Source of the DNA: Octopus bimaculoides
Taxonomy: Eukaryota
Length of the DNA: 64,000 nucleotides
Assembly: GCF_001194135.2 (NCBI RefSeq)
Contig: NC_069008.1
Location: 12,751,044-12,815,043 of the forward strand
Reading direction: 5' to 3'
The notes under the pieces were generated by a model. The model saw only the letters and a program-made list of their open reading frames with translations, did not search any database and had not been told where the DNA came from. The translations under genes and the position numbers were made by a program. Below, piece after piece: positions 5,519 through 57,831 of the stretch (position 1 is the stretch's first letter; the number at the start of each line of letters is the position of its first letter).

Positions 5519-6889
5519 ATGAATAAAAAGAAACAAAAAACATCATCATACCACTGTGATATTTGTGGGAAATCATTCTCTGGAAGTGCTAACTTAGCAA
5601 AACACAAATGTACTGGTGCAGGAGAAAAACCATACCACTGTGATATCTGTGGAAAATCATTTTCTGAACGTTGTAACTTAAGAACACACAAACGTATTCA
5701 TACAGGAGAGAAACCATATCGCTGTGATATTTGTGGTAGATTATTCTCTGTAAGTAGTGTCTTAACTAATCACAGACGTATTCATACAGGAGAGAAACCA
5801 TATCAGTGTGATATCTGTGGCAAATCGTTCTCTCAGAGAGGTATCTTAACTAATCACAAACATATTCACACAGGAGAGAAACCATTTCAGTGTGATATTT
5901 GCAGTAAATCGTTCTCTGAAAGTCGATTCTTAACGACACACAAACGTATTCATACAGGGGAGAAGCCATATTGCTGCGATATCTGTGGTAAATCATTCTC
6001 TGTCAGAGGTACCTTAACTAATCACAAACGTATTCATACAGGAGAGAAACCATATTCTTGTGATATCTGTGGTAAACCATTCTCTGAAAAAGGTACCTTA
6101 ACTAAACACAAACGTATTCACACAGGAGAGAAACCATATAAGTGTGATATCTGTGGTAAATCATTCTCTGGAAATAGTTGCCTAACTGAACACAAACGTA
6201 TTCACACAGGAGAGAAACCATATTACTGTGATATTTGTGGTAAATCATTCTCTCGAAATGGTTACTTAACTGAACACAAACATATTCATACAGGAGAGAA
6301 ACCTTACCGTTGTGATATCTGTGGTAAGTCGTTTGCTCTTAAAGAACACTTAACTAAACACAGACGTATTCATACAGGAGAGAAGCCATATTGCTGTGAT
6401 ATCTGTGGAAAATCATTCTCCCGATGTAGTGATTTAACTAAACACAAACGTATTCACACAGGAGAGAAACCATATTGCTGTGATATCTGTGGCAAATCAT
6501 TCTCTCGAAATTCTCACTTGAATGAACACAAACGAAGTCATACAGGAGAGAAGCCATATCACTGTGACATCTGTGGTAAATCATTCTCTCATGGAACTAA
6601 CATAGCTATACACAAACGTATTCATACTGGAGAAAAACCCTATCACTGTGATATCTGTGGTAAGTCGTTCTCTCAAAATGGTGAATTAGCCTCTCACAAA
6701 CGTATTCATACTGGAGAGAAACCCTATCACTGTGATGTCTGTGGTAAATCATTCTCTCAAAAAAATCAGTCAACTACACATAAACGTATTCATACTGGAG
6801 AGAAGCCATATCAGTGTGATATGTGTGGGAAATCATTCTCTCAAAGGATCCATTTAATGAAACATGTTGGTATTCATGTACGGCAGTAA
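5519..6889 (+). CDS. C2H2 zinc-finger protein ZNF-A1, 456 aa, 16 tandem fingers (first lacks its second His)
   Basis: [21 protein letters not shown] repeats. ATG at 5519 ([12 protein letters not shown]) matches paralog starts MNKEKGKT; the ORF-track start at 5465 is a GTG. Confidence 0.92.
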
Positions 6890-6930
6890 CTGTATCAGTA
6901 TAAAAGTTCTGGTTGTCAAGGATAATTTCA

Positions 6931-9700
6931 CCCTCCCTCTGACTGGTTAACCATGTATCTCCTCTATAACAACACACCTATTCTGGCCTCAGTCTTGATC
7001 ACTCTCTTTGATCTGGTAACCATTTATCTCTTCTCTGTCACACACTAACCTTTCATCACATTACCTGGTCACCTGGTACAAGATCACCTTCTCCAATGCC
7101 CCCTTCTTGCCATCACCTACACCTGCATTCACACCTTCTCACCATGCCTGGCCTCCATTCCTTCCTTCTGCACCTCTACTTTCTTCTCTCCCATTTTCTT
7201 TCCAACTTTCTTCCCCGGTGCCTGCAACCCTCTATACAACTCTCTCATTCTCTTTTTAAATAAAACCCGCCACTCCAGCTATCTCTCTTTCCATCACCGT
7301 TGCCTCCATCATCATGTCACACCCCATAGCTTCAAGGGACCTATACAGGGAGGAAGCGCTCAGTCAACTTTTTGAACTCCCTCTTCTATTGCCTTCTCCT
7401 CTCCGACCCCACCCTCTCCAACCAGCAGCACGTGTCCTCCACCATCCATGACCTCATCTCATCTTCTGCCTCCCTTCTACTGCCACCAACCTCATTGTCC
7501 AAACACCCCATATCTCCACCATGTATTTCCTTCCCAAAATACACAAACCCAACAACCCAGGCTGCCCCATTGTTTCCGCCTGTAACTGCCCCACAAAACT
7601 CATTTCAAAATATCTCAACCTCATCCTGTCCCCTTTAGTTGCTGATCTGTCTCATTAACGACACCAACCATGCCCTTTGCCTCTTCAATTCCTTCTCCTT
7701 CCCTCCCAGCCCTTCATGCTTCATTTTAACCTGGGACATAAAATTACTAGATACTATGATCCTCCACAACGACGGTCTCTTAGCCCTCGAATACTTCCTC
7801 GACTGTTGCCCCGACCACACATCCAGCACCTCCACCCTTCTCACCCTCAACTGCTTTATGTTCACAGGAGAGATTTATCAGCAGGTCTCTCGTGTTGCTA
7901 TGAGAAGAAGAATGGGCCCCAATCTTGTCAACTTATTTGTTGGTTACACTGAGACCCAAATCTTCTCACAATTCTTTGGACCGACCCCAGAGCTGTGCGG
8001 TTGCTATATAGATGACTGTATAAGTGACACCTCCCGCTTCTGCAAGCAGCTCTCCAGTTTCATCTCCTTCATTTCTAACTTCCACCCTTCTCTTGAATTT
8101 ACCTCTACCTTCGCTGACACTTCTGTAAACTTCTTGGATATCTCTCTCACCACCTATGCCTTCCATCCTATGGACTCCCACCTCTGCCTCAACTTTTCCT
8201 CCTCCCATCCCTCCCACACCAACTGGGCCATCCCAGTTCCTCTGCCTCTGACACCTGTGCAGTGGGGACAAGGATTTCAAAACCTAGTCTGAATACCTGG
8301 CCCACTTGTTCATACGTTGTGGATACCCATCCACCCTTGCCTAAACTACTCTTATCCATGCTTGTCAAATCGATCGCACTCTCCTTCCCCACACTGATCC
8401 CCTTTTCCATCCCTCCACTCTACCCCTTCGTCAGAGGATCCTGCAGGCCTTCCGTCGCCTCCAGCTAAATCCCACCACCCGCCCTTGCCCTCCTTCAAAC
8501 TCGCCCGTAACCTACGCGATCTTCTGGTCTGTAGCACCCTCCCCCCTCCATTCCAATCCCACCCAGATCCTTTCCTTGCTCCAAATCCCATTGCCACCTC
8601 TGTCACTTCATCACTAACACCTCCTCCTTCACCGTACCCAACTAGCACACCCTCTACATTAGGAACTCCTCCTGCACTTCTTCCAGCCTTATTTATTGCA
8701 TCAGGTGTAATCTCTGCAACAAACTTTACATTGGCCAGACAGGCCACCGGCTAGCCAACCGGTACATCAGACATCTACGAGATATTTGTCTACGTACAAA
8801 CACCCCTGTTGCCCGTCATTTTCGCTTGGCCAACCAGTTCACTTCCAATAACACCGTCTTCAGCCTTGCCCTTCACAATGGACCCACCAGTTTTCACTCT
8901 ACATACCCAAACTCCTTTCTGACTCAACTCAACCTCATCCTCTCAGTGACTGTTCCTATAAACTTTTAAAAAAAACTTTTTACCTTGTCTTATTTTTTTA
9001 TTATTTCGTTTATCTCTTATTCAGTTTTTTTGATTTTTTTATCATTTATTCTTTTATTTGGTTATTTATTATTGGTTTATTCTGATTTTTTTATCTTTTA
9101 AAAATTTAGTTATTTTAACTTTCATTTATTTATTTCTCTTACTGATTTGTTCACATAATCTTTTTCCTTTGTTTTTATTTTATCAACTTTTATTTATTGT
9201 TTATCATTTTTTATTAATAATTGTATTTTCATATTTTATATTCCCATACCACACACCACATACCCTGCTCACCACACACGTGCACACACTCATCCATATT
9301 CACCCATTCACACAACCTTCAGACTACCCCAACTCACTATTGACCATTCCATCTATACACACATGCTAAAACACACACACACACACACACACCTGTCGCT
9401 ATAGCTCCTGACCTCTCACTACAACATTACACACACAGACACACACCAACCATTCTTCACACTCTCCTGTCCCAGAAAGTACTTTCTCTTTGTCCTACTT
9501 CCAGTCATTTGAAAAATGTAATTACACATGGACTGTCTGTGACTTTTTTTTCCTCCTTCCTTTTCTTGTGGACTTTCCTATGTTTTCTGTTTCTGAAGAA
9601 GAGCTGTGTTCAAAACATAAGTTTCCTTCTCTAAGCATCGTATTAATACTTACATGTGCTATGTCTTCATGTTATTTTTTTCTTGTCTTTTTCTCCGTTT
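6931..9700 (+). mobile_element. Penelope-like element (RT + GIY-YIG), degenerate, inserted just 3' of ZNF-A1
   Basis: RT motifs YFLPKIHKP, VAMRRRMGPN (GVAMG-type), CYIDD, NFHPSLEFT, NFLD, SSHP. GIY-YIG motif SLIYCIRCNLCNKLYIGQTGHRL at ~8690-8760. Multiple frameshifts. Confidence 0.85.
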
Positions 9701-10100: not shown

Positions 10101-10754
10101 TTAATTTCAATTATGTTTGTTTTGTTTTGGAGAGATTTATATAAAGCTTTAACTTTCATTATATTAGTAACTATGGAAGACTGGTGGGATTATTATTTGT
10201 ATGGACTTATAGATTGGTCCAGATTTAGTATATAATTTAGTTATTGCAGTTTGATATTAATACCGATACAATGTACATTGGTTTATATGTTTTTTATTGT
10301 AGTTTATTAAAGTTTAATCCTGCCTATAAATTGATTTATTGAATGAATGTGGTTGTTAAGCTTTCACTTTTTATATTATACTACGGAAGACAGTAGGGAT
10401 TATAATTTTTGTATGACTTAATAGATTTGTTGCTGTTTAATTACGTATTTAGGAGTTGGTTGTAATTTATTTATTGAATTTATTTACTGATACTGTTGTA
10501 CATAGGGTAAATGTATTTGAAAGTTGTAATTTATTTGGTTTGTTTGTTCCCAAACAACACTTATCTTATTGTTGTTGACACTGCCGGATTGAATGGTACT
10601 GCCCTGGTGTTGAAACCATAATGATATCTGTGGGGCAGCTGATGATGGAGGTATGTTGCATTGTTGGTATGGCTGTTTTTGTATATGTGGAATAGTATTA
10701 TAACACATCCTTTTGATATATACACACATGCATAGTTTGATATGATGATGATGA

Positions 10755-10995
10755 TCATCATCATCATCGTTGTTTAACGTCCGCTTTCCATGCTAGCATG
10801 GGTTGGACGATTTGACTGAGGACTGGTGAAACCAGATGGCTACACCAGGCTCCAATCTAATTTGGCAGAGTTTCTACAGCTGGATGCCCTTCCTAACGCC
10901 AACCACTCTGAGAGTGTAGTGGGTGCTTTTACGTGCCACCGGCATGAAGGCCAGTCAGGCGGTACTGGCAATGGCCACGCTCAAATGGTGTTTTT
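10755..10995 (-). mobile_element. RTE-type LINE 3' end
   Basis: Near-identical to 2810-3047. Confidence 0.85.
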
Positions 10996-11724
10996 ATATT
11001 TTGTTAATCTGTCGTATTATTGACAGGCATATACTCAACGAATTGACGTGTCTAGCTGCTCTCTCCTTAATTAATCTACAACATTCTCACCCATTCATTA
11101 GTTTTATCTATCCTTCTTTTCCTCTGGATAATGTCTGTATCTTAACTATCTTAACAACATCAATGAACTATTGTGTATCATTTTGGCACAAGCAAGGATG
11201 TGTTGAACATGTTTATTTTTGTATATACATAGCAATGATGGTTTCTACAGAATGCTTTCGTTAAAAAAACTAACACTTCTGAGTTTATCACAGGTTAGCC
11301 TACATGTTGTTAAATAACTTCCTTTCGAAATTCTCCCTGGGCATATACCCAATTCACTGGTTTTGAATATGGAATTTTATTTCTGAAATTAAAGAATTTT
11401 GTATGCAAACAGCTGTAGGTAGAAATTTCTATGTATGAATTCGAATGTCTTTGAATAAAAATATCTGTACGTAAATTTTTATCCATTTTCTTCATTTCCG
11501 TATTTAAAAAGATTTATTTAAATACGTATATGTTTTGATGATAAACTAATATACTTGGTTTTCTCTGAACGCTGGTATAAACTGGTAAACTAGGATGCTT
11601 GCTTCCTTTAAGGGACTTTAGTTCCTTGACTAATTAAATGAAATATATATGTACATGTATATATACATAAATGTATATATATATATATATATATATACAT
11701 AGTTATATGTACACATGTATATAC

Positions 11725-11925
11725 ATCATCATCATCGTTTAACGTCCGCTTTCCATGCTAGCATGGGTTGGACGATTTGACTGAGGTCTGGTGAAACCAG
11801 ATGGCTGCACCAGGCTCCAATCTGATTTGGCAGAGTTTCTACAGCTGGATGCCCTCAGAGAGTGTAGTGGGTGCTTTTACGTGCCACCGGCACGAAGGCC
11901 AGTCAGGCGGTACTGGCAGCACATG
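11725..11925 (-). mobile_element. RTE-type LINE 3' end
   Basis: Near-identical to 10755-10995 with a small internal deletion. Confidence 0.85.
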
Positions 11926-11939
11926 TGTATATACATACA

Positions 11940-11988: not shown

Positions 11989-12158
11989 NNNNNNNNNNNN
12001 NNNNNNNNNNNNNNNNNNNNNNNNNNNNNNNNNNNNNNNNNNNNNNNNNNNNNNNNNNNNNNNNNNNNNNNNNNNNNNNNNNNNNNNNNNNNNNNNNNNN
12101 NNNNNNNNNNNNNNNNNNNNNNNNNNNNNNNNNNNNNNNNNNNNNNNNNNNNNNNNNN
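11989..12158. other. Assembly gap (N run)
   Basis: N bases. Confidence 1.
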
Positions 12159-13619: not shown

Positions 13620-14330
13620 TTAAATCCAACATGGACCAAAAGGTTTCTACACCTGGATGCCCTGCCTCATGTCAACCACTACAAGAGTGTAGTGGGTGCC
13701 TTTTAACATGTCATTGGTATGGATGCTTTTATGTCACCGAAACCAGCTACAACTATGACTTCACTTGATGAGTCTTCTCAAGCATAGCATATTGCCAAAG
13801 GTCTCGATCACTTGTCATCGCTTCCATGAGAGTCAGCTTTCGAAGATCGAACTTCAACACCTTGTCCCATGTCTTGCTGGGTCTACCTCTTCCACAGTCA
13901 GAGATTGGCACTTCTTTACACATCTACCCTCATCCAATTGCATCATATGACCATACCAGTACAGTTGTTTCTCTTGCAACATCTGATGCCTCTTATGCCA
14001 AGTTTTTCTCTCAAAATACTTACACTCTGTTGTACATGCACACTGACATTGGACATTCAGCAAAGCATACTAGCTTCATTTCTTTCAAGCTTTTGCATGT
14101 CCTCTGTGGTCACAGCTCATGTTTCACTGCCAAGTATTATGACAGTTTGCACACAGGCATCATACAATCTACCTTTCACTCTGAGGGTGAGGTCCTATAT
14201 TACCAACAAAGGTAGAAGCTTTCTGAACTTTGCCCAACCTATTCTTATTTTAGCAGTTATGCTCTCAGAGCATCCATCTGTTGCTGATTTGGTCACTTAG
14301 ATAATGGAAGTTATTAACTACTTCTAGGTA
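13620..14330 (-). mobile_element. RTE-type LINE 3' fragment
   Basis: Remnant translation EKQLYWYGHMMQLDEGRCVKKCQSLTV, followed by 3' UTR motifs. Confidence 0.8.
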
Positions 14331-17066: not shown

Positions 17067-18179
17067 CTATAGTATATGAATAGCTACATGTTTTGTTAAG
17101 TGAATCCTTTGAGGAAATGATTTGCCACAGATATAACATTGGTATGGTTTCTCTCCTGTATGAATACGCACATGTGTAGTTAAATGGCTTGTTTTAGAGA
17201 AAGCTTTGTCACAGATATCACACTTGTATGGCTTTTCTCCTGTATGAATACGTATGTGTGTAGATAATTGGCTTGTTTTAGAGAATGCTTTACCACAGAT
17301 ATTACAGTGAAATGGCTTCTCCCCTGTATGACTTCGTTTATGTTCAGTTAAGCGATCGTTTCGAGAGAAAGATTTACCACAGATACCACAATGATATGGC
17401 CTCTCTCCCGTGTGAATATGTTTGTGTTTAGTTAAATCACCACTCTGAGAGAATGATTTCCCACAGATGTCACAGTGATATGGTTTCTCTCCTGTGTGAA
17501 TACGTTTGTGTATAGCCATGTTATTTCCCAGAGAGAATGATTTACCACAGATATCACAGTGATATGGCTTCTCTCCTGTGTGAATATGTTTATGTACAAC
17601 TAAATGATCATTTCGAGAAAATGATTTACCACATATATCACAGTGATATTGTTTCTCACCAGTGTGAATATACTTGTGTTTAGTTAAATCACCACTTTGA
17701 GAGAATGATTTACTACAAATATCACAATGATATGGCTTCTCTCCTGTATGAATATGTTTGTGTTTAGTTAAATCACTGCTTCCAGAGAATGCTTTACCAC
17801 AGATATCACAATGATATGGTTTCTCTCCTGTATGAATACGTTTGTGTTTAGTTAAGGTACCTCTCACAGCGAATGAATTACCACAGATATCACAGTGATA
17901 TGGCTTCTCTCCAGTATGAATACGTTTGTGATTAGTTAGGACACTACTTACTGAGAAAGATTTACCACAGATATCACAATGATATGGTTTCTCTCCTGTA
18001 TGAATACGCTTATGTGTTGTCAAGTTAGAATTTTCAGAGAACGATTTACCACAAATATCACATTGATGTGGTTTCTCTCCTGCATGAATACGTTTGTGTG
18101 ATGTTAAGCGACCAGCTTCTGAGAATAATTTTCCACAAATATCACAGTGGTATGATGTTTTCCCTTTCTCTTTATTCAT
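17067..18179 (-). CDS. C2H2 zinc-finger protein ZNF-A2, 370 aa, 13 fingers
   Basis: Intact [18 protein letters not shown]... with TGEKP linkers. AATAAA on the minus strand at 17021-17026, about 40 nt past the stop. Confidence 0.93.
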   Translation of the reverse strand: MNKEKGKTSYHCDICGKLFSEAGRLTSHKRIHAGEKPHQCDICGKSFSENSNLTTHKRIHTGEKPYHCDICGKSFSVSSVLTNHKRIHTGEKPYHCDICGNSFAVRGTLTKHKRIHTGEKPYHCDICGKAFSGSSDLTKHKHIHTGEKPYHCDICSKSFSQSGDLTKHKYIHTGEKQYHCDICGKSFSRNDHLVVHKHIHTGEKPYHCDICGKSFSLGNNMAIHKRIHTGEKPYHCDICGKSFSQSGDLTKHKHIHTGERPYHCGICGKSFSRNDRLTEHKRSHTGEKPFHCNICGKAFSKTSQLSTHIRIHTGEKPYKCDICDKAFSKTSHLTTHVRIHTGEKPYQCYICGKSFPQRIHLTKHVAIHIL

Positions 18180-18531
18180 ATCACCAGGAAACTTTTTTTT
18201 TTTTTACCACAACATTGAAATATTTATCTTCTTTTAATTAATGTATTTTATTCCTGATAAGTATTTTTACCACTGTAATTTTTGTCAACAACTGGATTGA
18301 GTTGTAAACTCCATGTTATATTTGTATATGTGCAAATTTAATTCAAATGTAAAATCTTGCTCACATTCCAGTCAGGAGAGAACAGAATTTTTGTTATAAA
18401 TCTCAGTTCAGAGAAAATATTTGCATGTAATTTTCCACAAAGGTATATCTATTCAGCGCAACATTTTCTTTGTATCATTAAAAGATAAATATTGATGATG
18501 TATATAATTGTTTGGTACCAATGTCATTATT

Positions 18532-18640
18532 CTGAAAGAGTAGAGAAACAACAGTATAAGATACAGGGAAGACTTAAAATACAACAGAATAAATTTTAGT
18601 ATATTTCTTATAGAAACAAGCTGTAGAAATAAACATTTAC
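18532..18640 (-). other. Putative 109-bp 5'-UTR intron of ZNF-A2
   Basis: Reverse-complement homolog of 5008-5116 with CCAG|GTAAAT and TTTCAG|AATAAT. Confidence 0.55.
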
Positions 18641-18949
18641 CTGGACAATAGAACTGTTTTCCCTTATTTTCAAGATGTATATACCTGATCTGAATGTTTT
18701 TATGTAAACTATTTTCTGACTCATCACAGAGGATACACAAAACCTCAAACTTTTCTTATCATTATCAAAGACTATCACTTGATTTGAATACGTTTATCTA
18801 GACTAATTTTTGACACCACAGAGGATAGACAAAGCCTTTTTTAAATCAGTGAAACCAGTTAAGTTAATGATTACTTCTAAAAAAAACTCCTGCATTTTCA
18901 GATTCTATTCTTTATATTTTAACTCGTGTGATAACCCCCCAATTGTGTA

Positions 18950-24952: not shown

Positions 24953-25570
<618 letters not shown>

Positions 25571-33548: not shown

Positions 33549-34095
33549 NNNNNNNNNNNNNNNNNNNNNNNNNNNNNNNNNNNNNNNNNNNNNNNNNNNN
33601 NNNNNNNNNNNNNNNNNNNNNNNNNNNNNNNNNNNNNNNNNNNNNNNNNNNNNNNNNNNNNNNNNNNNNNNNNNNNNNNNNNNNNNNNNNNNNNNNNNNN
33701 NNNNNNNNNNNNNNNNNNNNNNNNNNNNNNNNNNNNNNNNNNNNNNNNNNNNNNNNNNNNNNNNNNNNNNNNNNNNNNNNNNNNNNNNNNNNNNNNNNNN
33801 NNNNNNNNNNNNNNNNNNNNNNNNNNNNNNNNNNNNNNNNNNNNNNNNNNNNNNNNNNNNNNNNNNNNNNNNNNNNNNNNNNNNNNNNNNNNNNNNNNNN
33901 NNNNNNNNNNNNNNNNNNNNNNNNNNNNNNNNNNNNNNNNNNNNNNNNNNNNNNNNNNNNNNNNNNNNNNNNNNNNNNNNNNNNNNNNNNNNNNNNNNNN
34001 NNNNNNNNNNNNNNNNNNNNNNNNNNNNNNNNNNNNNNNNNNNNNNNNNNNNNNNNNNNNNNNNNNNNNNNNNNNNNNNNNNNNNNNNNNNNNNN
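33549..34095. other. Assembly gap (N run) covering the acceptor, 5' UTR and start codon of ZNF-B1
   Basis: N bases; sequence resumes at A GAG AAA CCA (K-E-K-P). Confidence 1.
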
Positions 34096-34972
34096 AGAGA
34101 AACCACAATCAAGATATCAGTGCAATATCTGTAAAACGTTTTTCACTTACAAACATAGTTTAACTACACACAAACGTATACATACAGGAGAGAAGCCATT
34201 TCACTGTGATATCTGTGGTGAATCATTCTCTGTTCGAAGTGACTTAACTAATCACGAACGTATTCATTCTGGAAAGAGGCTATTTCACTGTGATATCTGT
34301 GGTAAATTATGCTCTTGTGGGAGTGCCTTAATATCTCACAAGCGTATTCATACAGGAGAGAAACCATTTCACTGTGATATCTGTGGTAAATCGTTTCTTT
34401 TCAAAAGTTCTGTAGCTCCTCACAAGCGTATTCATACTGGAGAGAAGCCATTTCAATGTGATATCTGTGGTAAATCATTCACTGTTGGAAGTGCCTTAAT
34501 AACTCACAAGCGTATTCATACAGGAGAGAAACCGTTTCACTGTGATATCTGTGGTGAATCATTCTCTCGAAGTAGGAATTTAACTGATCACAAGCGTATT
34601 CATACTGGGGAGAAGCCATTTCACTGTGATATCTGTGGTAACTCATTCTATCGAAATAGGACTTTAACTGATCACAAGCGTATTCATACAGGAGAGAAAC
34701 CATATCAGTGTGATATCTGTGGTAAATCATTCTCTCAAAGTAGGACTTTAACTGATCACAAACGTATTCACACAGGAGAGAAACCATATCAGTGTGATAT
34801 CTGTGGTAAATCATTCTCTCAAAGTAATGTTTTAACCAAACACAAACGTATTCATACTGGGGATAAACCATATCAGTGTGGTATCTGTGGTAAATCATTC
34901 TCTGTAAAAAGTAAATTAATTATGCACAAACGTGTTCCCACAGGGGAGAATCTTTATGATTGTGCTATCTAG
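34096..34972 (+). CDS. C2H2 zinc-finger protein ZNF-B1, 5' partial; 10 fingers, last with His->Pro
   Basis: [22 protein letters not shown] matches the B2/B3 N-termini ([11 protein letters not shown]). The 502-aa ORF call through the Ns is an artefact. Confidence 0.88.
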
Positions 34973-41935: not shown

Positions 41936-42878
41936 TATATATATATATATATATGTATATGTGTCTGTTTACAGTTTGGCAAAAGAGAATAAGGACTAGG
42001 CATACAAAGAATAAATCCTGGGGTTGATTTCTTCAACTAAAAGGTGGTGCTCCAGCATGGCCACAGTCAAATGACTGAAACAAGTAAAAAGGAAGAATGA
42101 ATATATATATATATATATATATATGTAATAATAAAGGATAAAAATGATCAAAGATTTTATCAGTGGCCAGCATATAATATAGACCTATTAAGGTAAATTC
42201 ATATATAGAGAATTTATAATAGTATAAAATACAATTATAATTAAGGGCATAGAAGAGACCATGACATATATATTTAGACACATACAAGATGATGATGATG
42301 ATATATTTACATAGACACATTATGAGAAGCATAGCCTCTAGAATGATGTTGGTATTCCAAACCTGACATAATGTTAGAGTTGGTCTTAGTAACGGTGATG
42401 GTTTTAGTTGTAATCCACTGTTTCATCTCTGCTTTTAAAATGTCCTCTAAATCTTACACTGTTGTTTCTCTCTTTTATTTCAGAATATCAGATGACATTG
42501 GCATCACAGTATTGTTTCCATGAATATTTATCACCTTCTAAAACTGAAAGAAAATATTGTTCAGAATAGATTTTTAATAATCCTAGAGAATTACAGTGAA
42601 ATATTTCTTCTGAAGTGAGATTGATAGCAACATTTCTCTTCTTAAATGTTTGGAATGTCTACAGAGTGATTTTATACAGAAATCAAACTTCGGTAATTTT
42701 GAAAAGAATCTTACAGCATCTTCAGATATTAACAAAGATTGCAGCCGAAGGAAAGAGAACAGTAATAAAGGAATAAACTGTGGAATTGAACAGGAAATGC
42801 TTTGGCATATATTGTGCTGATAAAAGCAAAATGAGGATTGTCTGAGAAAGCTGTAGAATATATTTTTATAAAGAGGTG

Positions 42879-43931
42879 ATGTCAAAAGAGAAACCACAAT
42901 CAAGATATCAGTGTGATATCTGTAAAACGTTTTTCACTTACAAACATAGTTTAACTACTCACAAACGTATACATACAGGAGAGAAGCCATTTCACTGTGA
43001 TATCTGTGGTGAATCATTCCCTGTTCGAAGTGACATAACTAAGCACAAACGTATTCATATTAGAGAGAAGCTATTTCACTGTGATATCTGTGGTAAATTA
43101 TCCTCTTGTGGAAGTGCCTTAATATCTCACAAACGTATTCATACGGGGGAGAAGCCATTTCACTGTGATATATGTGGGAAATCATTCTCTCAAAGTAGCG
43201 TTTTGACTTATCACAAACGTATTCATACAGGAGAGAAGCCGTTTGATTGTGATATCTGTGGTAAATCATTCTCTGTTGGAAGTGCTTTAATATCTCACAA
43301 GCGTATTCATACTGGAGAGAAACCGTTTCACTGTGATATCTGTGGTAAATTATTCTCTGTTGGAAGTGGCTTAACATCTCACAAGCGTATTCATACTGGA
43401 GAGAAGCCATTTCAGTGTAATATCTGTGGTAAATCATTCTCTCAGAGTAGCACTTTAACCAAACATGAACGTATTCATACAGGGGAGAAACCATATCACT
43501 GTGATGTCTGTGGTAAATCATTCTCTGAAAATGGCAAATTAACCATGCACATACGTATTCACACAGGAGAGAAGCCATTTCACTGTGATATTTGTGGTAA
43601 ATCATTTTCTGCAGGTAGCATATTAATTAAACATCAACGTATTCATACAGGAGAGAAGCCTTTTCACTGTGATATCTGTGGTAAATCATTCTCTCAAAGT
43701 GGCACTTTAACCAAACATGAACGTATTCATACAGGGGAGAAGCCATATCAGTGTGATATCTGTGGGAAATCATTCTCCGAGAAAGGTAAATTAAGTCTGC
43801 ACGTACGTATTCACACAGGGGAGAAGCCATTTCACTGTGATACCTGTGGTAAATCATTCCCTGCAAAAGGTAAATTAACTATGCACAAACGTATTCACAC
43901 AGGGAAGAAGCCATATCATTCTGCTGTTTAG
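42879..43931 (+). CDS. C2H2 zinc-finger protein ZNF-B2, 350 aa, 12 fingers
   Basis: ATG at 42879 ([11 protein letters not shown]); upstream acceptor TTTCAG| at 42483. Confidence 0.93.
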   Translation: MSKEKPQSRYQCDICKTFFTYKHSLTTHKRIHTGEKPFHCDICGESFPVRSDITKHKRIHIREKLFHCDICGKLSSCGSALISHKRIHTGEKPFHCDICGKSFSQSSVLTYHKRIHTGEKPFDCDICGKSFSVGSALISHKRIHTGEKPFHCDICGKLFSVGSGLTSHKRIHTGEKPFQCNICGKSFSQSSTLTKHERIHTGEKPYHCDVCGKSFSENGKLTMHIRIHTGEKPFHCDICGKSFSAGSILIKHQRIHTGEKPFHCDICGKSFSQSGTLTKHERIHTGEKPYQCDICGKSFSEKGKLSLHVRIHTGEKPFHCDTCGKSFPAKGKLTMHKRIHTGKKPYHSAV

Positions 43932-46790: not shown

Positions 46791-47181
46791 TTAAAACTGG
46801 ATATAAATACTGTCAAAATTGCTTCTAAAGATTATTGTCTTATTTAACCATTAATAAAGATTATCTTATATAACTATAAATGTATTCACACACAACCTAC
46901 GATGTAACAATATATAAGAGCAACTATTCGACTCTATATTTTATATATATCCTACCATAACTTTATTTATATTTTAATAAAATCACACTTTCAAAATGTT
47001 CATCACTTGGCTGTGTGATAAAGAAGTTTGCTTTCAAACCACATGGGTTTGGGTTCATTCCCACTGCATAACATCTTGGATAAGTGTCTTATATACCCTG
47101 AACTGACCAAAGCCTTGCTAGTGTATTTGGTAGATGGCAACTTGAGAAAAACCTGTGTGTGTGTATATATGTATGTATGTA

Positions 47182-48029
47182 TTGGGTCATCCCATAAATA
47201 ATGCGTTTTTTTTTAATATTTATTTTTCAAAATTAAGATAAAGTTCTTTTTAATCTAAAACATACTCTCCTTCATTTTCTTCAATGCTCTGCCATCTAGC
47301 TGGTATATTTGCAATGCCCCTCTTCTAAAATCCACTTGTGTGTGACGAAAAATACTCTTCTAGTACTGTTCTGACCTCATCTACAGAATTCATATTTTTC
47401 CTGTCCAAGTGATTTTGAAGTCTGCAAAATAAATGATAATCAGATTGGGCAAACTGCTCCAGCTGTCGGAATGTTATCGCTGCATGTGGCAAGCATTATC
47501 CTGATGGTAGACCATCTTTCGTCTTGAAACCAAAGATGGTCATTTTCTGATGTTATGCAGGTGTTGATGAAGTGTTGAATGACCAAATCCAAGCTTCTCT
47601 GCTGTCTTCTCAATAGTTACAATGGGATTTTGTTCCACCAGGGTTTGCAGGACCTCCTCATCGAGCTCTACAGATCTTCCAGGATGAGGCTCGTCTTCTA
47701 GGCTGTAGTATCCGGCTCGGAATTTCTGGAACCACCGTTGACACTGGCTTATGCTTATTTTCCAATCCCCATATGCTGCATTAGTATTCCTTGCATTTTC
47801 CGTTGTGTTGTTGCCTTTATTGAACTCATAAATCAAAATATGCTGAATATGCTCCTTTGTCACTTCCACAATAGCTTTGAAAAAATAACTGTTAAAATCA
47901 AAGTGGACTCTTCCAAACTTGCACTGAGAATGAAAACAAGGTAAAATTACATCCTGTTCCCTTCCAACTTCCCCTCTGACTTTTAGTTCATACAATTGAA
48001 AAAACCGTGTTATTTATGGGATGACCCAA
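47182..48029 (-). mobile_element. Mariner element, internally deleted, 848 bp
   Basis: TIRs TTGGGTCATCCCATAAATAA.. at both ends and TA TSD at 47180-47181 and 48030-48031. N-terminal HTH (EVTKEHIQHILIYEFNKG...SQCQRWFQKFRAG) and C-terminal DYHLF motif are present; most of the catalytic core is missing. Confidence 0.92.
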
Positions 48030-49859
48030 TAATTTATGTTGTATTGTTTCAGCAAGTAATGTTTTGATGAGGTAAGAGAGTGAAGATAATCTTAAAATAA
48101 AAACTACTGTAGTAGTGCAGGTTACTTCTATTGTACTGCACTTAACTGTGCAGGCTAAGCCTCGCCAATGTTTGAACGAATTTGTAATGGCCATGCCAGC
48201 CTGGAAGCAATAAATTATGTTGAAATTTGTCTTAAGATAGATGAGGCTTAGCCCATACAGTCAAGTACTCTATGCTACATGTGTCCTACAACACTATGAT
48301 GGTTTTTATTTTGACATTATATACATATATTCATGCATGTGTCTGTGTTATATACATGTATGTCTGTATCTTCTTGTCTTGATATCACATGATTGTTGCA
48401 TATGAATGTCATTAGGATTGCAAATTATATGAGTAAATATGGTATTGTGTGGGGTGGGGGCATGGATTGTGTTTAAGCATTGATTAATCCTGGATGAACA
48501 AACTTGCAATATAAAACGGGTTGATTACAGGGACTTTTATGACCTTTCAAATGGAAATAAAGATTGTATTGAACCAAGGAAAGATGTTTAAATAACAAAG
48601 AAAATTTACAAAATACCTTGTACATGTGGCTTCTAACTACAGTTTGGTACCCCCACCACTGATTTTCATTTTATTTCACAATGACATCTCCTAGCATACA
48701 CTAAACAGGTTTCCTTGTTTTACTTAGAAATCCATCCACATTCTCTGGCCAGTACTTGTGGAAGGGTTGATGTGGGTAGGGACCTGAGATACCTCATTAC
48801 AAGGGTACAATCAGAGACAATGATCATTTCAGTCTCCAGTTGGAATCTGAAGTATAAGCAACTGAAATAATGACTATTATCCAATCATCTATTTCTTGGT
48901 CTATCCCTAGGACTGCCTTTTAGTTAGGCTTGAAGAATCTGCCTTGTGAGTCTTTTATGCAACTTTCTAACCACAAGTCTAAAATACAGGAGTTGTAATC
49001 TCTCAATGTAGAAAGAGTCCTTGATCTCCACAGTAGAGATCTTTTGGTGGAACCACATTTGGCCACTTGTATTCTTGATCATACTCTTTCAAACATCACC
49101 TAACCTTTCTTCTGCGAATTGAATGCTTGATGTGGCTCATTACTGTACCAGCACCTATAATTCTTTGAGTAGGAAAATAAGGGAAAAGAAAATACATGTA
49201 TCATAAATGCTTTGACAGAGTTTTTTCTAGATCTAAAATATTAAGGAATGAAAATAAATGGAATGTAGGAGTACTATTTCCCTTTGGCAGAACAGTTATC
49301 CATCTATGCATGATTTAGTTAGTGTAGCCAACTACTTTAACTTGTGCATAAACACATGCTGCTGCCTATCACCAGACATGGGGAAGTTTTTTAGTCAGTT
49401 CTAGTCAGGCTTCCACTGAAGCAAGATGTATCATCATGTCGCTGTCTGAACCCAACACCATGTGGAAAATATCTAATAGAGAAACATTCAGCACCTCACC
49501 TTGCACACCCAATCTCCAATGCACAGCTTTCACTGGGGGAGATTGCAAGAAATACTGCAATCGGTGTTGTTTTACAGTGCTTTCAGTTTTCAGTTTTTTT
49601 TTCACTTTTAATTAGTTCTTCCAGAACATTATGGAATACAGCTTTTGTTATGCTAAACATAAAAATAACCGCAAACAAGGATGTTTTGAAGTGTTGAATA
49701 TTTTGTGTTAAATAATTTGCAACGTATGAGAGGATACAAACCACAATTAAAGCTAGTCTCTTTTCTGTCGACCACTTCATTATCTACTTTGCAAGTCCTC
49801 GTCTACAGTTTGTCTCTTGCAAGTTCACCGAAAAGAAGAATGTTAATTAGATTTTATTG

Positions 49860-53789: not shown

Positions 53790-54248
53790 GGAGTTGCATG
53801 AAACGATCGTACTGCATTACCTCTAGATATCCTTGTTGCTTATTTTGTTGCGAAGACTTATTGGGGCAAGCGAAAGCAAAATCGGGATGGCACCTGTGCC
53901 CAGCGTCGCCTTTCTGGCACTTGTGCCCGTGACATGTGCAAGGATTTTCAAGCGAGATCATTGCCAGTGCCCCTGGACTGGCTCTTGTGCAGGTGGCACA
54001 TAAAATACACCATTTTGAGCGTGGTCGTTGCCAGTACTGCCTGACTGGCCTTTGTGCCGGTGGCACGTAAAAACACCCACTACACTCTCGGAGTGGTTGG
54101 CGTTAGGAAGGGCATCCAGCTGTAGAAATGCTGCCAAATCAGATTGGAGTCTAGTGTAGCCATCTAGTTTCACCAGTCCTCAGTCAAATCGTCCAACCCG
54201 TGCTAGCATGGAGAGCGGACGTTAAACGACGGATGATGATGATGACGA
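53790..54248 (+). mobile_element. RTE-type LINE 3' end, young
   Basis: Close to the reverse complement of 10755-10995; (GAT)n tail. Confidence 0.85.
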
Positions 54249-54774
54249 TATATATATATATATACACACAAAGATATATATACTATTTGTCTTTCTGTCT
54301 TCTTCCCTGCTTTCCACGGCACTTCTTCATTCCTGTATTCTGATGGAAGAAAGAAACCTGAATGACTCTTTCCCTTCTACTGTTCAAGCAGGAAAACTTG
54401 TCCCTCTGGTCATGTTTTTGAATCTTTTCTTTTTTTCATTATTCTCATTCATTACATGTTTCTCTCTCACTCTGTCTCTCTATGTATGCTATCAATCAGT
54501 TTCATTTCTCTATTTCTTCTCCATAGAGAAAGAGCCGGACTCTAACATAGATTCAAGGCTCCTTCATTGGAACTTTTATCAACGTCATCTAGGTATTTGT
54601 GCATATGTGTGTGTGTGCAGTATTTGGTGTTAGTGTATGCGCAGATTTGTATGTTTGTTTTATGGATGCGTTTTTATGTCTAGATGCATGCATATGTATT
54701 TATGTGCTAAATTTTTGGAAAGTTTTACATATCTTTACAGTTCCATTGATGGCTTGAATCTGTAATGTATGTAT

Positions 54775-55322
54775 GTATATACTCTTTTACTTGTTTCAGT
54801 CATTTGACTGCGNNNNNNNNNNNNNNNNNNNNNNNNNNNNNNNNNNNNNNNNNNNNNNNNNNNNNNNNNNNNNNNNNNNNNNNNNNNNNNNNNNNNNNNN
54901 NNNNNNNNNNNNNNNNNNNNNNNNNNNNNNNNNNNNNNNNNNNNNNNNNNNNNNNNNNNNNNNNNNNNNNNNNNNNNNNNNNNNNNNNNNNNNNNNNNNN
55001 NNNNNNNNNNNNNNNNNNNNNNNNNNNNNNNNNNNCTCTTTTGCCGAACCGCTAAGTTATGGGGACGTAAGCACACCGGCATTTGTTGTCAAGCGATGTT
55101 GGGGGGACAAACACAGACACACAAACATATACACACACATTCATATATATATACATATATACGATGGGCTTCTTTCAGTTTCCGTCTACCAAATCCACTC
55201 ACAAGGCTTTGGTCGGCCCAAGGCTATACTAGAAGACACTTGCCCAAGGTGCCACGCAGTGGGACTGAACCCATAACCATGTGGTTGATAAGCAAGCTAC
55301 TTACCACACAGCCACTCCTGCG

Positions 55323-55324: not shown

Positions 55325-55381
<57 letters not shown>

Positions 55382-55437
55382 AAGCATATATATATGTAAA
55401 CATATACATATACGTGTGTGCACATACATAGGTGTAT

Positions 55438-56030
55438 ATCATCATCATCATCTGTTTTCCATGCTGGCATGGGTTGGACGGTTTGACTGAGGTCTGGAGA
55501 GCCAGATGGCTGCACCAGGCTCCAATCTGATCTAGCAATGTTTCTACAGCTGGATGCTCTTCCTAACATCAACCACTCCACGAGTGTAGTGGGTGTTTTT
55601 TACGTGCCACTAGCACAGGCCAGTCAGGCAGACCTGGCACTGGCCACACCTATGATTGCATCGGCCATGGCTGTGATCTCACTTTAGTTGCTTGGTCTTC
55701 TCAATCCAAAGGTCTCGGTCTCCTGTCATTGCTTCTATGAGGCCTAACGTTCGAAGGTCATGCTTTACCACCTCATCCCATGTCTTCCTGGGTCTACCTC
55801 TTCCACAGTTAGGGTGTGGCACTTCCTCACACAGCTGTCCTCATCCATACGTAACACATGACTATACCAGCACAGTTGTCTCTCTTGTACACTACATTTG
55901 CTGCTTCTTATGTTCAACTTTTCTTTCAGGGTGCTTGCACTCTGTCGTGTATGCACACTGACATTACACACCCAGCGGATCATACTAGCTTCATTTCTTT
56001 CAAGCCTACACATGATCTCAAGAGTGTTGG
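55438..56030 (-). mobile_element. RTE-type LINE 3' fragment
   Basis: ORF 55765-56013 (RLERNEASMIRWVCNVSV...VLRMDEDSCVRKCH), followed by the tail. Confidence 0.85.
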
Positions 56031-56937
56031 CTCATGCTAATTAAAAAGCACCCAGAACACTGGGTTGACATTAAGAAAGGTATCTATCTGTTAAAACCAT
56101 GGCAGAGCAGACAGTAGAGCAGGGTGCAGTTCTCTGGCTTGCCAGCTTCTGTCAAATTACCCAACCCATACTAGCATGGATAACAGACTTAAATATTGAT
56201 GGTGATGATGATGATGTCATAGTCGAAGGGAAAAGGGGTAATGTCTATGATCTATTTTAGGGTCTCAAAAACTAGATGGTAGTGGTGGTGTGGAGGGAAA
56301 GTTTCAGATAGGAGACATCGCCTGGATTCTTGCAATGAGGTGGATACTACTAAAGATGCCCAAAGCACCAGCGGTGGTGGGGGAGGGGTGTTAAACTGAG
56401 TGAGGGATTATGTTTGATACCAATAAAGCAATCCCAGATATACTATGGCTGAAAATAAGAGAGAGAGAGAGAGAAGTAAAAAAAAAATGTCCTCTATATC
56501 TTACACTGTCATTTCTCTCTTTTATTTCAGATGATCGGACGACATTAGCATCATGGCATTGCTTCCATCATCAGTATTTATCACCTTTTAAAACTGAAAG
56601 AAAATATTGTACAGAAAAGATTTCATAACTGTAGAGAATTACAGTAAAATATTTCTTCTGAACTGAGATTGATAGCAACGTTTCTCTCCTTAAATATTTG
56701 GAATGTCTACAATGTGATATTGTACACCAATTAAACTTGGATAATTTTATAAAGAATCCTACAGCATCTTCAGATATTACCAGAGATTGCAGTTGATGGA
56801 AATAGAGTTGTAAAATTATTTGTTAGCAATAAACTTTTGAATGAAAATAGGAAATGTATCCATGTGATGATAAAAGTAAAATAATGGACAAATGGATTGT
56901 GTGAGAAAACTGAAAAATATATTGTTATTGCAAAGAG

Positions 56938-57831
56938 ATGTCGAAAGAGAAACCACAATCAAGATATCAGTGCAATATCTGTAAAACGTTTTTCACTTAC
57001 AAACATAGTTTAACTACACACAAACGTATACATACAGGAGAGAAGCCATTTCACTGTGATATCTGTGGTGAATCATTCTCTGTTCGAATTGATTTGACTA
57101 AACACAAACGTATTCATTCTGGAAAGAGGCTATTTCACTGTGATATCTGTGGTAAATTATGCTCTTGTGGGAGTGCCTTAATATCTCACAAACGTATTCA
57201 TACGGGGGAGAAGCCAGTTTACTGTGATATCTGTGGTAAATCATTCTCTCAAAGTAGCTGTTTAACTTATCACAAACGTATTCATACAGGAGAGAAGCCA
57301 TTTGATTGTGATATCTGCGGTAAATCATTTCCTGCTGGAAGTTCTTTAACATCTCACAAGCGTATTCATACAGGAGAGAAACCATTTCACTGTGATATCT
57401 GTGGTAAATCATTCTCTTTTCGAAGTGCCTTAGTATCTCACAAGCGTATTCATACTGGAGAGAGGCCATTTCACTGTGATATCTGTGGTAAATCGTTCTC
57501 TGAAAGAAGGAATTTAACTAATCACAAACGTATTCATACTGGAGAGAAGCCATTTAATTGTGATATCTGTGGTAAATCATTCTCTCGAAGTAGCAATTTA
57601 ACTGTCCACAAGCGTATTCATACTGGGGAGAAGCCATTTCACTGTGATATTTGTGGTAAACCATTCTGTCAAATTGGGAATTTAACTGATCACAAGCGTA
57701 CTCACACAGGAGAGAAGCCATTTGAATGCGATATCTGTAGTAAATCATTCTCTCTTCATAGCACTTTAACCAAACATAAATGTATTCACACAGGGAAGCA
57801 GCCATTTCACTGTGATTTCTATGGTAAATGA
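56938..57831 (+). CDS. C2H2 zinc-finger protein ZNF-B3, 297 aa, 10 intact fingers
   Basis: [15 protein letters not shown]...; acceptor TTTCAG| at 56530. The stop TGA replaces the TCA (Ser) of an 11th finger. Confidence 0.92.

What the first reader, a model, noticed from the sequence alone, without database searches (positions are those of the whole stretch)
5519..57831. Tandem cluster of six finger-only C2H2-ZNF genes with no effector domain, embedded in very dense TE debris
All intact ORFs begin only 11-12 residues before finger 1 and end at or just after the last finger. No KRAB, ZAD, BTB or SCAN sequence is present in the coding exon, and the upstream exons appear non-coding (seen). Large clustered C2H2 expansions are known in octopus. 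Linkers and scaffold are invariant while the helix residues vary strongly, the pattern of TE-targeting KRAB-ZFPs in tetrapods. Inference: an independent TE-surveillance or decoy system in which bare arrays act by occupancy, or recruit a co-repressor through the short basic N-terminus (MNKEKGKT / [11 protein letters not shown]).
Basis: partly seen in the sequence, partly recalled or inferred. Interest (0 to 1): 0.7.

Follow-up and report, generated by a model that had tools for sequence, protein, structure and literature searches.

The report
Ordinary octopus zinc-finger gene cluster
This is a typical piece of the already well-known zinc-finger gene expansion of the California two-spot octopus: six duplicated finger-only genes (four intact) in repeat-rich DNA, with nothing in the sequence that shows what they bind or that they police transposons.

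Summary
The window is Octopus bimaculoides chromosome CM046628.1 (the species name is from memory of the accession). Six Krüppel-type C2H2 arrays exist where stated, but only four are intact ORFs: A, B, E and F. C is a pseudogene. D's start codon lies inside an assembly gap. F is cut by a premature stop with relic fingers beyond it, and D and E also have a killed finger after their stop. B is inverted.

"No effector domain" holds as far as sequence can show. Pfam finds only fingers in the five ORFs scanned, and nothing in about 24,000 residues of gene-strand open segments around the arrays. In-frame stops lie 27-60 nt upstream of each ATG, with no conserved splice acceptor. The recorded gene calls equal the bare ORFs.

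Scaffold codons are constrained (dN/dS 0.19). DNA-contact codons run at about the neutral rate (1.2, CI 0.9-1.6), so positive selection is not shown. Repeat density (about 40% repeated within the window) matches the genome average of about 45%.

The expansion, its clustering, its coincidence with a TE burst, and the TE arms-race idea are all already published. The occupancy, decoy and N-terminal-motif proposals have no support in the sequence. Verdict: real, ordinary, already known.

The parts
5519..6889 (+). Gene A: single-exon ORF of 456 aa. N-terminus [10 protein letters not shown], one degenerate finger (HKCTG, second His lost) and 15 canonical fingers. Natural end right after the last finger (…HVGIHVRQ*).
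   Evidence: an exact gene call is on record
4966..5518 (+). Upstream block of A, homologous to the upstream blocks of B, C, E and F. It holds multiple stops in the ORF frame, the last one 60 nt before the ATG. There is no YAG or pyrimidine-tract acceptor in between.
17067..18179 (-). Gene B, inverted: ORF of 370 aa, N-terminus MNKEKGKTS plus 13 canonical fingers. Fingers 6-7 and 9-10 look like an internal 3-finger-period duplication.
   Evidence: an exact gene call is on record
18180..18682 (-). Upstream block of B, homologous to that of A. The last in-frame stop is 27 nt before the ATG.
24986..25560 (+). Pseudogene C of the A/B subfamily. It keeps the [12 protein letters not shown] and ~6.5 finger units. 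It has in-frame stops at 25217, 25310 and 25439, and a frameshift before the relic of the terminal QRIHLMK finger.
33549..34095 (.). Assembly gap that swallows D's start codon, its first 8 CDS bases, and the ~440-bp upstream block present in E and F.
34096..34972 (+). Gene D of the D/E/F subfamily, with its 5' end unread: 9 canonical fingers, one finger with the second His lost (HKRVP), then a stop. A relic finger follows at 34973-35010.
42879..43931 (+). Gene E: ORF of 350 aa, N-terminus MSKEKPQSR plus 12 canonical fingers. The stop replaces a Cys of a 13th finger, whose relic is at 43932-43990.
   Evidence: an exact gene call is on record
42437..42878 (+). Upstream block of E, 79% identical to that of F. 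The last in-frame stop is 36 nt before the ATG.
56938..57831 (+). Gene F: ORF of 297 aa with 10 canonical fingers, truncated by a nonsense codon inside finger 11 (CDFYGK*).
   Evidence: an exact gene call is on record
57832..58010 (+). Relic fingers of F beyond its stop, in the same frame, with further stops at 57838 and 57967.
56484..56937 (+). Upstream block of F. The last in-frame stop is 27 nt before the ATG.
47179..48034 (-). Mariner (Mos1-type) fragment. It is present in the downstream flank of E but absent from the homologous flank of F, so it inserted after the duplication. The HTH_48 ORF is at 47540-47995.
   Evidence: (E = 5e-17)
7452..8966 (+). Probable Penelope-like retroelement remnant just downstream of A. 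It has KIHK…PIVS and YIDD motifs and a weak GIY-YIG match.
   Evidence: GIY-YIG E = 0.0044, below Pfam's cut-off; Pfam found no family in either RT-like open segment (7639-8292; 7452-7655); the motif reading is from my own knowledge
10740..10995 (+). Best copy of a ~250-bp SINE-like family. The family has 23 hits in the window covering 6.6% of it, for example 2804-3039, 11700-11937, 32758-33002, 35991-36246, 54007-54263 and 55413-55661.
   Evidence: no tRNA or Rfam match

Best explanation
**What it is.** The region is a ~52-kb stretch of one of the lineage-specific C2H2 poly-zinc-finger gene clusters of Octopus bimaculoides. Local segmental duplication, including one inversion, produced two related subfamilies: A/B/C and D/E/F. 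They are evolving by birth and death. Four copies are intact. One is a pseudogene. One has an unread start. One of the intact copies has already been shortened by a nonsense mutation. The arrays also grow by internal duplication of 2-3-finger blocks.

**Gene structure.** Each gene encodes its whole protein in one exon: a 9-10-residue lysine-rich N-terminus followed directly by 10-16 Krüppel-type fingers. There is no recognisable effector domain.

**How it most likely works.**
- Shown: selection has kept the zinc-finger fold and linkers intact, while the DNA-contacting residues have changed at about the neutral rate or faster.
- Inferred: the proteins are most likely nuclear, sequence-specific DNA binders whose paralogues have diverged in target specificity.
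- Not determined by the sequence: what they bind and what happens after binding.

**My estimate of the targets.** About 45% mainly repeats or TEs, as published genome-wide predictions suggest. About 35% host regulatory DNA in neural or embryonic programmes. About 20% largely dispensable copies. Any downstream effect would have to come from occupancy or from partners recruited through the fingers themselves.
For: **Source and context.** The window is GCA_001194135.2, CM046628.1. Albertin 2022 reports about 1,800 clustered C2H2 genes in this species (PMC9068888).

**Architecture.** Six arrays; Pfam on the five ORFs scanned finds only finger families (pseudogene C not scanned).

**Duplication history.** The paralogues share ~450-550 bp of upstream sequence. 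D, E and F share further flanks, and E's flank carries a mariner insert that F's lacks. C, D, E and F carry decay lesions. The arrays show 168- and 252-bp super-periods.

**No effector domain.**
- Pfam finds nothing in 18,082 residues of gene-strand open segments >=40 aa upstream of all six arrays.
- It finds nothing in ~6,200 residues downstream of A, B and F.
- In-frame stops lie 27-60 nt before each ATG, with no position-conserved YAG or pyrimidine tract in between, and with a purine at -3 in all five copies.
- The ATG position is shared by both subfamilies and by the pseudogene.
- Gene calls with exactly the ATG-to-stop products, spanning only the ORF, are on record for A, B, E and F.

**Selection.** Scaffold dN/dS is 0.19 (0.13-0.29). 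Contact dN over scaffold dS is 1.2 (0.9-1.6).
Against: - I obtained no transcript evidence. Exact-match look-ups found these ORFs only in the genome record, not in run assemblies. So expression, 5'UTR structure, and the absence of a weakly spliced upstream coding exon remain inferences.
- I could not verify where the recorded gene calls came from.
- A novel effector exon unknown to Pfam, or shorter than 40 aa, would have been missed.
- Orthologues from other octopus species could not be retrieved. The dN/dS values therefore rest on within-cluster paralogues, with some uncertainty about which fingers are orthologous.
- The pseudogene C, the truncated F and contact dN/dS of about 1 are also what a partly decaying cluster would show.
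Confidence: 0.85

Rival explanations
1. The bare arrays form a TE-surveillance or decoy system. They silence or mask transposons by occupancy alone, or by recruiting a co-repressor through the short basic N-terminus.
For: - No known effector domain is present.
- Contact residues diversify while the scaffold is constrained.
- Wells et al. 2023 found that predicted motifs of octopus ZNF ORFs are enriched in TE consensus sequences (PMC10547256).
- The ZNF expansion coincided with a TE burst about 25 Mya (PMC12988792).
- Paralogue dS (0.15-0.5) and SINE-like copy divergence (70-93% identity) are of similar depth.
Against: - Nothing in the window links these six arrays to any TE.
- The scaffold/helix pattern is universal among poly-ZNFs.
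- Contact dN/dS is not significantly above 1.
- TE density is at the genome average.
- The N-terminus (MNKEKGKTS / MSKEKPQSR) has no similarity to SNAG, eh1, WRPW or PxDLS-type repressor motifs (by inspection), and it differs between the two subfamilies.
- Wells et al. themselves state that such motif predictions recover only about 5% of known human motifs.
Confidence: 0.3
2. These are ordinary developmental or neural transcription-factor paralogues. The duplicates were retained for gene regulation in the nervous system and embryo, with no special relation to TEs.
For: Holzinger et al. 2025 report that octopus-specific C2H2 duplicates are expressed mainly in nervous tissue and segregate into different co-expression modules (PMC12513265). 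The purifying selection on the scaffold fits this reading.
Against: Expression of these particular six genes was not examined. The rapid turnover (pseudogene C, truncated F) and the near-neutral contact residues are unusual for regulators fixed in developmental networks.
Confidence: 0.3
3. A hidden effector exists. The true proteins carry an N- or C-terminal domain encoded by a separate exon that the ORF view and the recorded gene calls miss.
For: - Octopus introns can be long.
- The ~450-550 bp upstream of each ATG is conserved among the paralogues.
- Pfam cannot detect a lineage-specific domain. The 28-aa FiNZ domain of cyprinid ZNFs went unrecognised until 2023.
Against: - In-frame stops lie 27-60 nt before every ATG, and no plausible conserved acceptor lies between stop and ATG.
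- No Pfam domain appears in any gene-strand open segment in the window.
- The recorded gene calls equal the ORFs.
- The upstream homology is at the level of neutral divergence and contains stops in the ORF frame.
Confidence: 0.07
4. The cluster is largely non-functional. These are recently duplicated copies drifting towards pseudogenes, and the intact ORFs are simply young.
For: - C is dead.
- F is truncated.
- D and E have lost terminal fingers.
- A's first finger has lost a zinc ligand.
- Contact dN/dS is about 1.
- No transcript contig was found.
Against: Scaffold and linker dN/dS is 0.19, with an upper confidence limit of 0.29, over dS of 0.15-0.5. The zinc ligands are invariant in 57 of 57 scored fingers. 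That is incompatible with neutral drift of the whole coding sequence.
Confidence: 0.12

Closest known systems
Octopus / coleoid lineage-specific C2H2 zinc-finger expansions (Albertin 2015; Albertin 2022 PMC9068888; Holzinger 2025 PMC12513265)
   Same: Same species and genome. Both are clustered, locally duplicated multi-finger C2H2 genes embedded in SINE-rich DNA. This locus is simply a sample of that expansion.
   Different: Nothing substantive differs. The papers I could read do not discuss domain architecture. The word 'effector' does not occur in Holzinger 2025, so the explicit finger-only description of these copies is a small addition.
Tetrapod KRAB zinc-finger protein clusters (e.g. human chromosome 19)
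   Same: Both show tandem or inverted local duplicates and birth-and-death evolution with pseudogenes. Both have all fingers in one exon, TGEKP linkers, a constrained scaffold with fast-changing -1/2/3/6 residues, and array growth by internal finger duplication.
   Different: There is no KRAB A/B box anywhere on the gene strand, so there is no predicted TRIM28/KAP1 recruitment. Here the whole CDS is a single exon.
Cyprinid FiNZ-ZNFs (Wells et al. 2023, PMC10547256)
   Same: Both are large lineage-specific non-KRAB poly-ZNF families proposed to co-evolve with TEs, with a short N-terminal segment before the array.
   Different: FiNZ is a conserved 28-aa, glutamate-rich domain. Here the pre-finger segment is only 9-10 residues, lysine-rich, and differs between the two subfamilies. 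The FiNZ genes have knock-down evidence of TE de-repression, whereas nothing has been tested here.
Effector-less 'poly-ZF only' C2H2 proteins of vertebrates and insects (own knowledge)
   Same: The proteins consist of little more than a tandem Krüppel-type array, and many have unknown function.
   Different: None in kind. This shows that a finger-only architecture is not unusual in itself.
SNAG-domain repressors (Snail, Gfi1; own knowledge)
   Same: This is the only well-known precedent for a very short N-terminal peptide on a C2H2 protein acting as a repressor module.
   Different: The SNAG consensus (MPRSFLVK…) is absent. The N-termini here start MNKEK / MSKEK.

Membership tests
Krüppel-type C2H2 poly-zinc-finger proteins | Tandem C-X2-C-X12-H-X3-H fingers matching Pfam zf-C2H2 | tested here: met
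   63 of the 64 regex hits lie in six arrays; one is a chance match at 13987. PF00096 and PF13465 match with E = 1e-48 to 1e-134 for A, B, D, E and F.
Krüppel-type C2H2 poly-zinc-finger proteins | Conserved H/C linker TGEKP between fingers | tested here: met
   T 53/57, G 56/57, E 52/57, K 52/57, P 53/57.
KRAB zinc-finger proteins | N-terminal KRAB domain (PF01352), usually on separate upstream exons | tested here: not met
   There is no KRAB in the ORFs or in any gene-strand open segment >=40 aa upstream of the six arrays.
KRAB zinc-finger proteins | Recruitment of TRIM28/KAP1 and H3K9me3 deposition at targets | not testable with these tools
   This needs protein-interaction and chromatin assays.
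SCAN-, BTB/POZ- or ZAD-associated zinc-finger proteins | Presence of the respective N-terminal domain | tested here: not met
   The Pfam scans returned no families other than fingers.
FiNZ-ZNF (cyprinid) | Conserved ~28-aa glutamate-rich N-terminal domain | tested here: not met
   Only 9-10 residues, lysine-rich, precede finger 1. The FiNZ description comes from PMC10547256. No sequence comparison was possible because no FiNZ sequence was on hand.
SNAG-domain zinc-finger repressors | N-terminal MPRSFLV-type motif | tested here: not met
   The N-termini are [16 protein letters not shown] and MSKEKPQS. The motif is recalled from my own knowledge.
Octopus-specific C2H2 expansion | Encoded in the O. 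bimaculoides genome in local clusters of paralogues | tested here: met
   The window is GCA_001194135.2, CM046628.1. It holds six paralogous arrays in 52 kb. Clustering is documented in PMC9068888.
Octopus-specific C2H2 expansion | Falls inside one of the octopus-only clades of the published C2H2 tree | not tested
The homology searches were swamped by generic ZNFs.
Octopus-specific C2H2 expansion | Predominantly neural or embryonic expression | not testable with these tools
   There is no expression data. Exact-match look-ups found no transcript contigs.

The most novel reading that the evidence does not exclude
The octopus lineage-specific poly-ZNFs really do lack any effector module. They control transposons or satellite-like repeats without a KRAB/TRIM28-type adaptor. 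They would do so by long-footprint occupancy alone, or through a partner recruited by the fingers or by the 9-10-residue lysine-rich N-terminus. That would be an independently evolved, mechanistically different ZNF-TE arms race in a mollusc.
Probability: 0.12. Interest if true: 0.6.

Novelty: already known. Interest (0 to 1): 0.2.

Why it matters
As it stands, this matters little. The locus is a representative sample of a gene-family expansion described in 2015 and re-analysed in 2022, 2023, 2025 and 2026.

Its modest value is as a clean, small test bed. It offers four intact finger-only paralogues from two subfamilies, with a dead copy (C) and a truncated copy (F) as internal controls. The open question it could address is whether octopus ZNFs target TEs or neural genes, and how a protein with no effector domain produces any regulatory output.

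If finger-only arrays were shown to silence TEs, that would show that the ZNF-TE arms race does not need a KRAB-like adaptor.

Tried and rejected
1. **Full-length homology searches with B and E.** They returned only generic vertebrate KRAB-ZNFs at 40-58% identity, because the word prefilter is dominated by linker words. They say nothing about orthologues or N-terminal extensions.
2. **Search with E's family-specific first 60 residues.** It gave 14 candidates, none of them a close relative.
3. **Exhaustive representative search with the same 60 residues.** It was swamped by giant poly-ZNF proteins that accumulate score over 14-49 matched stretches, so it could not show whether relatives begin at residue 1.
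4. **Exact cluster look-up.** None of the ORFs is in the protein collection.
5. **Pfam by DNA reference on whole upstream frames.** I replaced this with X-joined open segments.
6. **The conserved 'TTACAG' ~300 nt upstream as a shared splice acceptor.** Rejected: B reads TTACAT there, and the ORF frame has several stops downstream of it.
7. **tRNA or Rfam origin of the SINE-like family.** No hit.
8. **Pfam on the LINE-tail-like and Tigger-like open segments.** Nothing significant. Their TE nature rests on their repetition in the window and on motif recognition from my own knowledge.
9. **The arrays themselves being cargo of a mobile element.** Considered and set aside. D, E and F share extended non-array flanks, as segmental duplicates would, and no terminal repeats frame the units. 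I did not test this exhaustively.
10. **Recognition-code motif prediction against the local repeats.** Not attempted. The published method recovers only about 5% of known motifs, so a six-gene test would not be informative.
11. **Albertin et al. 2015.** I could not read it. Its statements are cited only through later papers.

Full report
**Source.** An exact look-up of the 370-aa ORF at 17067-18179(-) places the window on GCA_001194135.2, record CM046628.1, at about 12.75-12.81 Mb. From memory, this accession is the chromosome-scale Octopus bimaculoides assembly. The window is 37% G+C and has five runs of N.

**What is there.** A six-frame scan for C-X2-C-X12-H-X3-4-H gives 64 hits. One is a chance match, and the other 63 fall into six arrays.

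| Array | Coordinates | Strand | Content | State |
|---|---|---|---|---|
| A | 5519-6889 | + | 456 aa; 15 canonical fingers + 1 degenerate first finger | intact ORF |
| B | 17067-18179 | - | 370 aa; 13 fingers | intact ORF |
| C | 24986-~25560 | + | ~6.5 finger units | pseudogene |
| D | 34096-34972 | + | 9 canonical fingers + 1 degenerate | 5' end unread (gap) |
| E | 42879-43931 | + | 350 aa; 12 fingers | intact ORF |
| F | 56938-57831 | + | 297 aa; 10 fingers | intact ORF, truncated |

- Pfam reports only zinc-finger families for the five ORFs scanned, with zf-H2C2_2 E-values of 1e-80 to 1e-134. C was not scanned.
- The only 84-bp tandem repeats in the window are the arrays themselves. They show 168- and 252-bp super-periods, which indicate internal duplication of 2-3-finger blocks.
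- There are two subfamilies. A, B and C start MNK(E/K)K… and share the terminal finger QRIHL(M/T)KH. D, E and F start [11 protein letters not shown] and share an unusual first finger, C(D/N)[15 protein letters not shown].
- No further arrays lie within 4.5 kb to the left or 3.8 kb to the right of the window.

**Gaps, tested first.**
- Gaps 11989-12158 and 54813-55035 are intergenic, next to SINE-like copies or microsatellites.
- Gap 25718-25907 lies beyond C's 3' flank. That flank (25589-25690) is homologous to B's 3' flank (17050-16952), so the gap does not truncate C.
- Gap 33549-34095 does matter. D's readable sequence begins at the position homologous to CDS nucleotide 9 of E and F. The sequence before the gap is a SINE-like copy. 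So D's ATG, its first two codons and the whole ~440-bp conserved upstream block are unread. The nominal 547 N could hold them, but D's continuity and intactness cannot be established.

**Corrections to the observation.**
- C is a pseudogene with in-frame stops at 25217, 25310 and 25439. A frameshift precedes the relic of its terminal finger.
- F stops inside finger 11 (…FHCDFYGK*). Two more finger relics continue in the same frame to about 58010, with further stops at 57838 and 57967.
- E and D both end with a stop that replaces a zinc-ligand Cys of one more finger: YHSAV*GKSFSQNCHLNRHISMH in E and YDCAI*GKSFS* in D.
- D's tenth finger has lost its second His, and so has A's first finger.
- Only A and B end naturally just after the last finger.
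- B is inverted relative to the other five.

**Is there an effector domain or a hidden coding exon?** Four lines of evidence bear on this.
1. *Pfam.* The five ORFs scanned contain nothing but fingers. I then took every stop-free segment of >=40 aa on the gene strand between each array and the previous array or window edge (18,082 residues). I did the same for segments of >=50 aa downstream of A, B and F (about 6,200 residues). Pfam returned no family at E <= 0.01 in any of them. So no KRAB, SCAN, BTB, ZAD or other known domain is present.
2. *Upstream stops and acceptors.* In all five assessable copies, the ORF frame is closed 27-60 nt upstream of the ATG. The AG dinucleotides in between are mostly AAG or GAG, preceded by 19-56% pyrimidine, and none is conserved in position. 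All five have a purine at -3.
3. *Start codon.* The ATG sits at the homologous position in both subfamilies and in the pseudogene.
4. *Gene calls.* Calls whose product is exactly the ATG-to-stop ORF, and whose range is only that ORF, are on record for A, B, E and F. No other gene is called within +-10 kb.

*Limits.* I do not know what produced those gene calls, and I found no transcript contigs. A lineage-specific domain unknown to Pfam, or an exon shorter than 40 codons, would escape detection. I put the chance of a hidden effector exon at about 7%.

**Selection.**
- Across 57 fingers the zinc ligands are invariant. Most scaffold and linker positions have <=1.3 bits of entropy (+5 is 1.5; the residue before the first Cys is 2.1). 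Positions -1, +1, +2, +3 and +6 have 3.2, 2.8, 2.4, 3.7 and 3.1 bits.
- I paired fingers between paralogues by unit-level alignment and pooled Nei-Gojobori counts.
- Scaffold and linker dN/dS is 0.16-0.30 per gene pair. Contact-codon dN divided by scaffold dS is 0.9-2.2.
- On the comparisons E-F, D-F and A-B, restricted to units with >=85% scaffold identity (27 units), the values are 0.19 (bootstrap 95% interval 0.13-0.29) for the scaffold and 1.23 (0.90-1.63) for the contact codons.
- So the fold has been under purifying selection since the duplications (dS about 0.15-0.5). The specificity residues have changed at the neutral rate or somewhat faster. Positive selection is not demonstrated.
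- This pattern is what every poly-ZNF family shows. It does not point to TEs in particular.

**Duplication history and repeats.**
- Paralogues share ~450-550 bp upstream of the ATG, at 67-79% identity.
- D and E share flank segments (37099-38912 with 44884-46786). E and F share others (46826-47178 with 58011-58359, and 48035-48838 with 58380-59177).
- The E copy is interrupted at 47179-48034 by a mariner fragment (HTH_48, E = 5e-17) that F lacks, so it inserted after the duplication.
- With the arrays masked, 25.3 kb of the remaining ~56 kb of read sequence is repeated within the window.
- One ~250-bp SINE-like family, with a (CATCAT)n-rich 5' edge, has 23 hits covering 6.6% of the window. It has no tRNA or Rfam match.
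- A family resembling LINE reverse-transcriptase C-terminal tails recurs five times: at about 3508-3817, 13766-14190, 36549-36837, 55666-56036 and 60854-61326. That identification is from my own knowledge, and Pfam gave nothing.
- A probable Penelope-like remnant lies at 7452-8966, with a GIY-YIG match at E = 0.0044, below Pfam's cut-off. Pfam found nothing in its RT-like segments, so the RT motifs are read from my own knowledge.
- The O. bimaculoides genome is about 45% repeats with about 4% SINEs (PMC12988792). The TE density here is therefore about average and says nothing specific about these genes.

**Comparison with what is known.**
- Coleoid genomes are known for clustered C2H2 expansions. 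Albertin 2022 reports 165 C2H2 genes on one octopus chromosome as 9% of the total, which means about 1,800 genes (PMC9068888).
- Holzinger et al. 2025 describe four octopus-specific expansion clades of 104-495 sequences, with mainly nervous-tissue expression. They call the ZNF-transposon arms race "an open question" (PMC12513265).
- Wells et al. 2023 predicted motifs for all octopus ZNF ORFs and found them enriched in TE consensus sequences relative to non-repeat DNA. They caution that only about 5% of predicted human motifs match experiment (PMC10547256).
- A 2026 BioEssays article sets out the arms-race and neural-function readings side by side. It also recalls that the ZNF expansion coincided with a TE burst about 25 Mya (PMC12988792).
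The N-terminus is 9-10 residues, lysine-rich, and different in the two subfamilies. It resembles none of the short repressor motifs I know (SNAG, eh1, WRPW, PxDLS; by inspection).
- Finger-only poly-ZNF proteins are also common in other animals (own knowledge).

**Verdict.** The feature is real but ordinary. It is a birth-and-death cluster of single-coding-exon, finger-only Krüppel-type ZNF genes belonging to the documented octopus expansion. The most likely mechanism is sequence-specific DNA binding with paralogue-specific targets. Whether those targets are TEs, and how binding is turned into regulation, remains open and needs transcripts, binding maps and reporter or partner assays. Interest is low (0.2). 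The most novel reading that is not excluded is effector-independent TE control, which I put at about 12%.

Noticed in passing
window 41518-41592: There is an interstitial telomere-type repeat, (TTAGGG)x12.5 at 84% matches. It lies ~1.3 kb upstream of gene E and ~0.85 kb beyond the 5' edge (42437) of E's conserved upstream block.
   Followed up: no
window 47179-48034 versus 58359-58380: A Mos1-type mariner fragment (HTH_48 ORF at 47540-47995, minus strand) interrupts the flank downstream of E. It is absent from the homologous flank downstream of F, so it dates to after the E/F duplication.
   Followed up: partly
window 7452-8966 (+): Open segments carry KIHK…PGCPIVS and CYIDDCI motifs, followed by LIYCIRCNLCNKLYIGQTG (weak GIY-YIG match, E = 0.0044). 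This is the layout of a Penelope-like retroelement, sitting 0.6 kb downstream of gene A. Pfam found nothing in the two RT-like segments.
   Followed up: partly
window 43060-43605(-), 34479-34898(-), 57098-57469(-), 57554-57967(-): Long antisense ORFs of 123-181 aa with a repeating '[13 protein letters not shown]…' motif run across arrays D, E and F. They are the open reverse-complement frame of the periodic finger repeat, not independent genes.
   Followed up: no
window 3048-3505, 11989-12158, 33549-34095, 54813-55035: Four of the five assembly gaps lie within 9-378 bp of a copy of the SINE-like family, often with (TA)n or (CAT)n microsatellites between them. This suggests that the assembly breaks at these repeats.
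   Followed up: partly
window 42831-42845 (E), 56893-56913 (F), about 5456-5470 (A): A short upstream ORF ends at a homologous TGA 27-50 nt before the main ATG. It reads MRIV* in E and MDKWIV* in F, both in the main frame, and MNNV* in A in another frame. The region is deleted in B. It may be a coincidence in AT-rich sequence.
   Followed up: no
window 17412-17642 and 17664-17894 (gene B); arrays D, E, F: B fingers 6-7 (QSGDLTK, RNDHLVV) and 9-10 (QSGDLTK, RNDRLTE) repeat with a 3-finger period. TRF finds 252-bp super-periods in D, E and F, and 168-bp super-periods in C and F. So arrays expand by block duplication.
   Followed up: partly
window 3508-3817, 13766-14190, 36549-36837, 55666-56036, 60854-61326: Five copies of a repeat have open frames reading …LYGSETWA…RMLRWMCNV…GRGRPRKTW…. 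This resembles the C-terminal tail of RTE/L2-type LINE reverse transcriptases. Several copies lie directly next to SINE-like copies. Pfam gave no match.
   Followed up: partly
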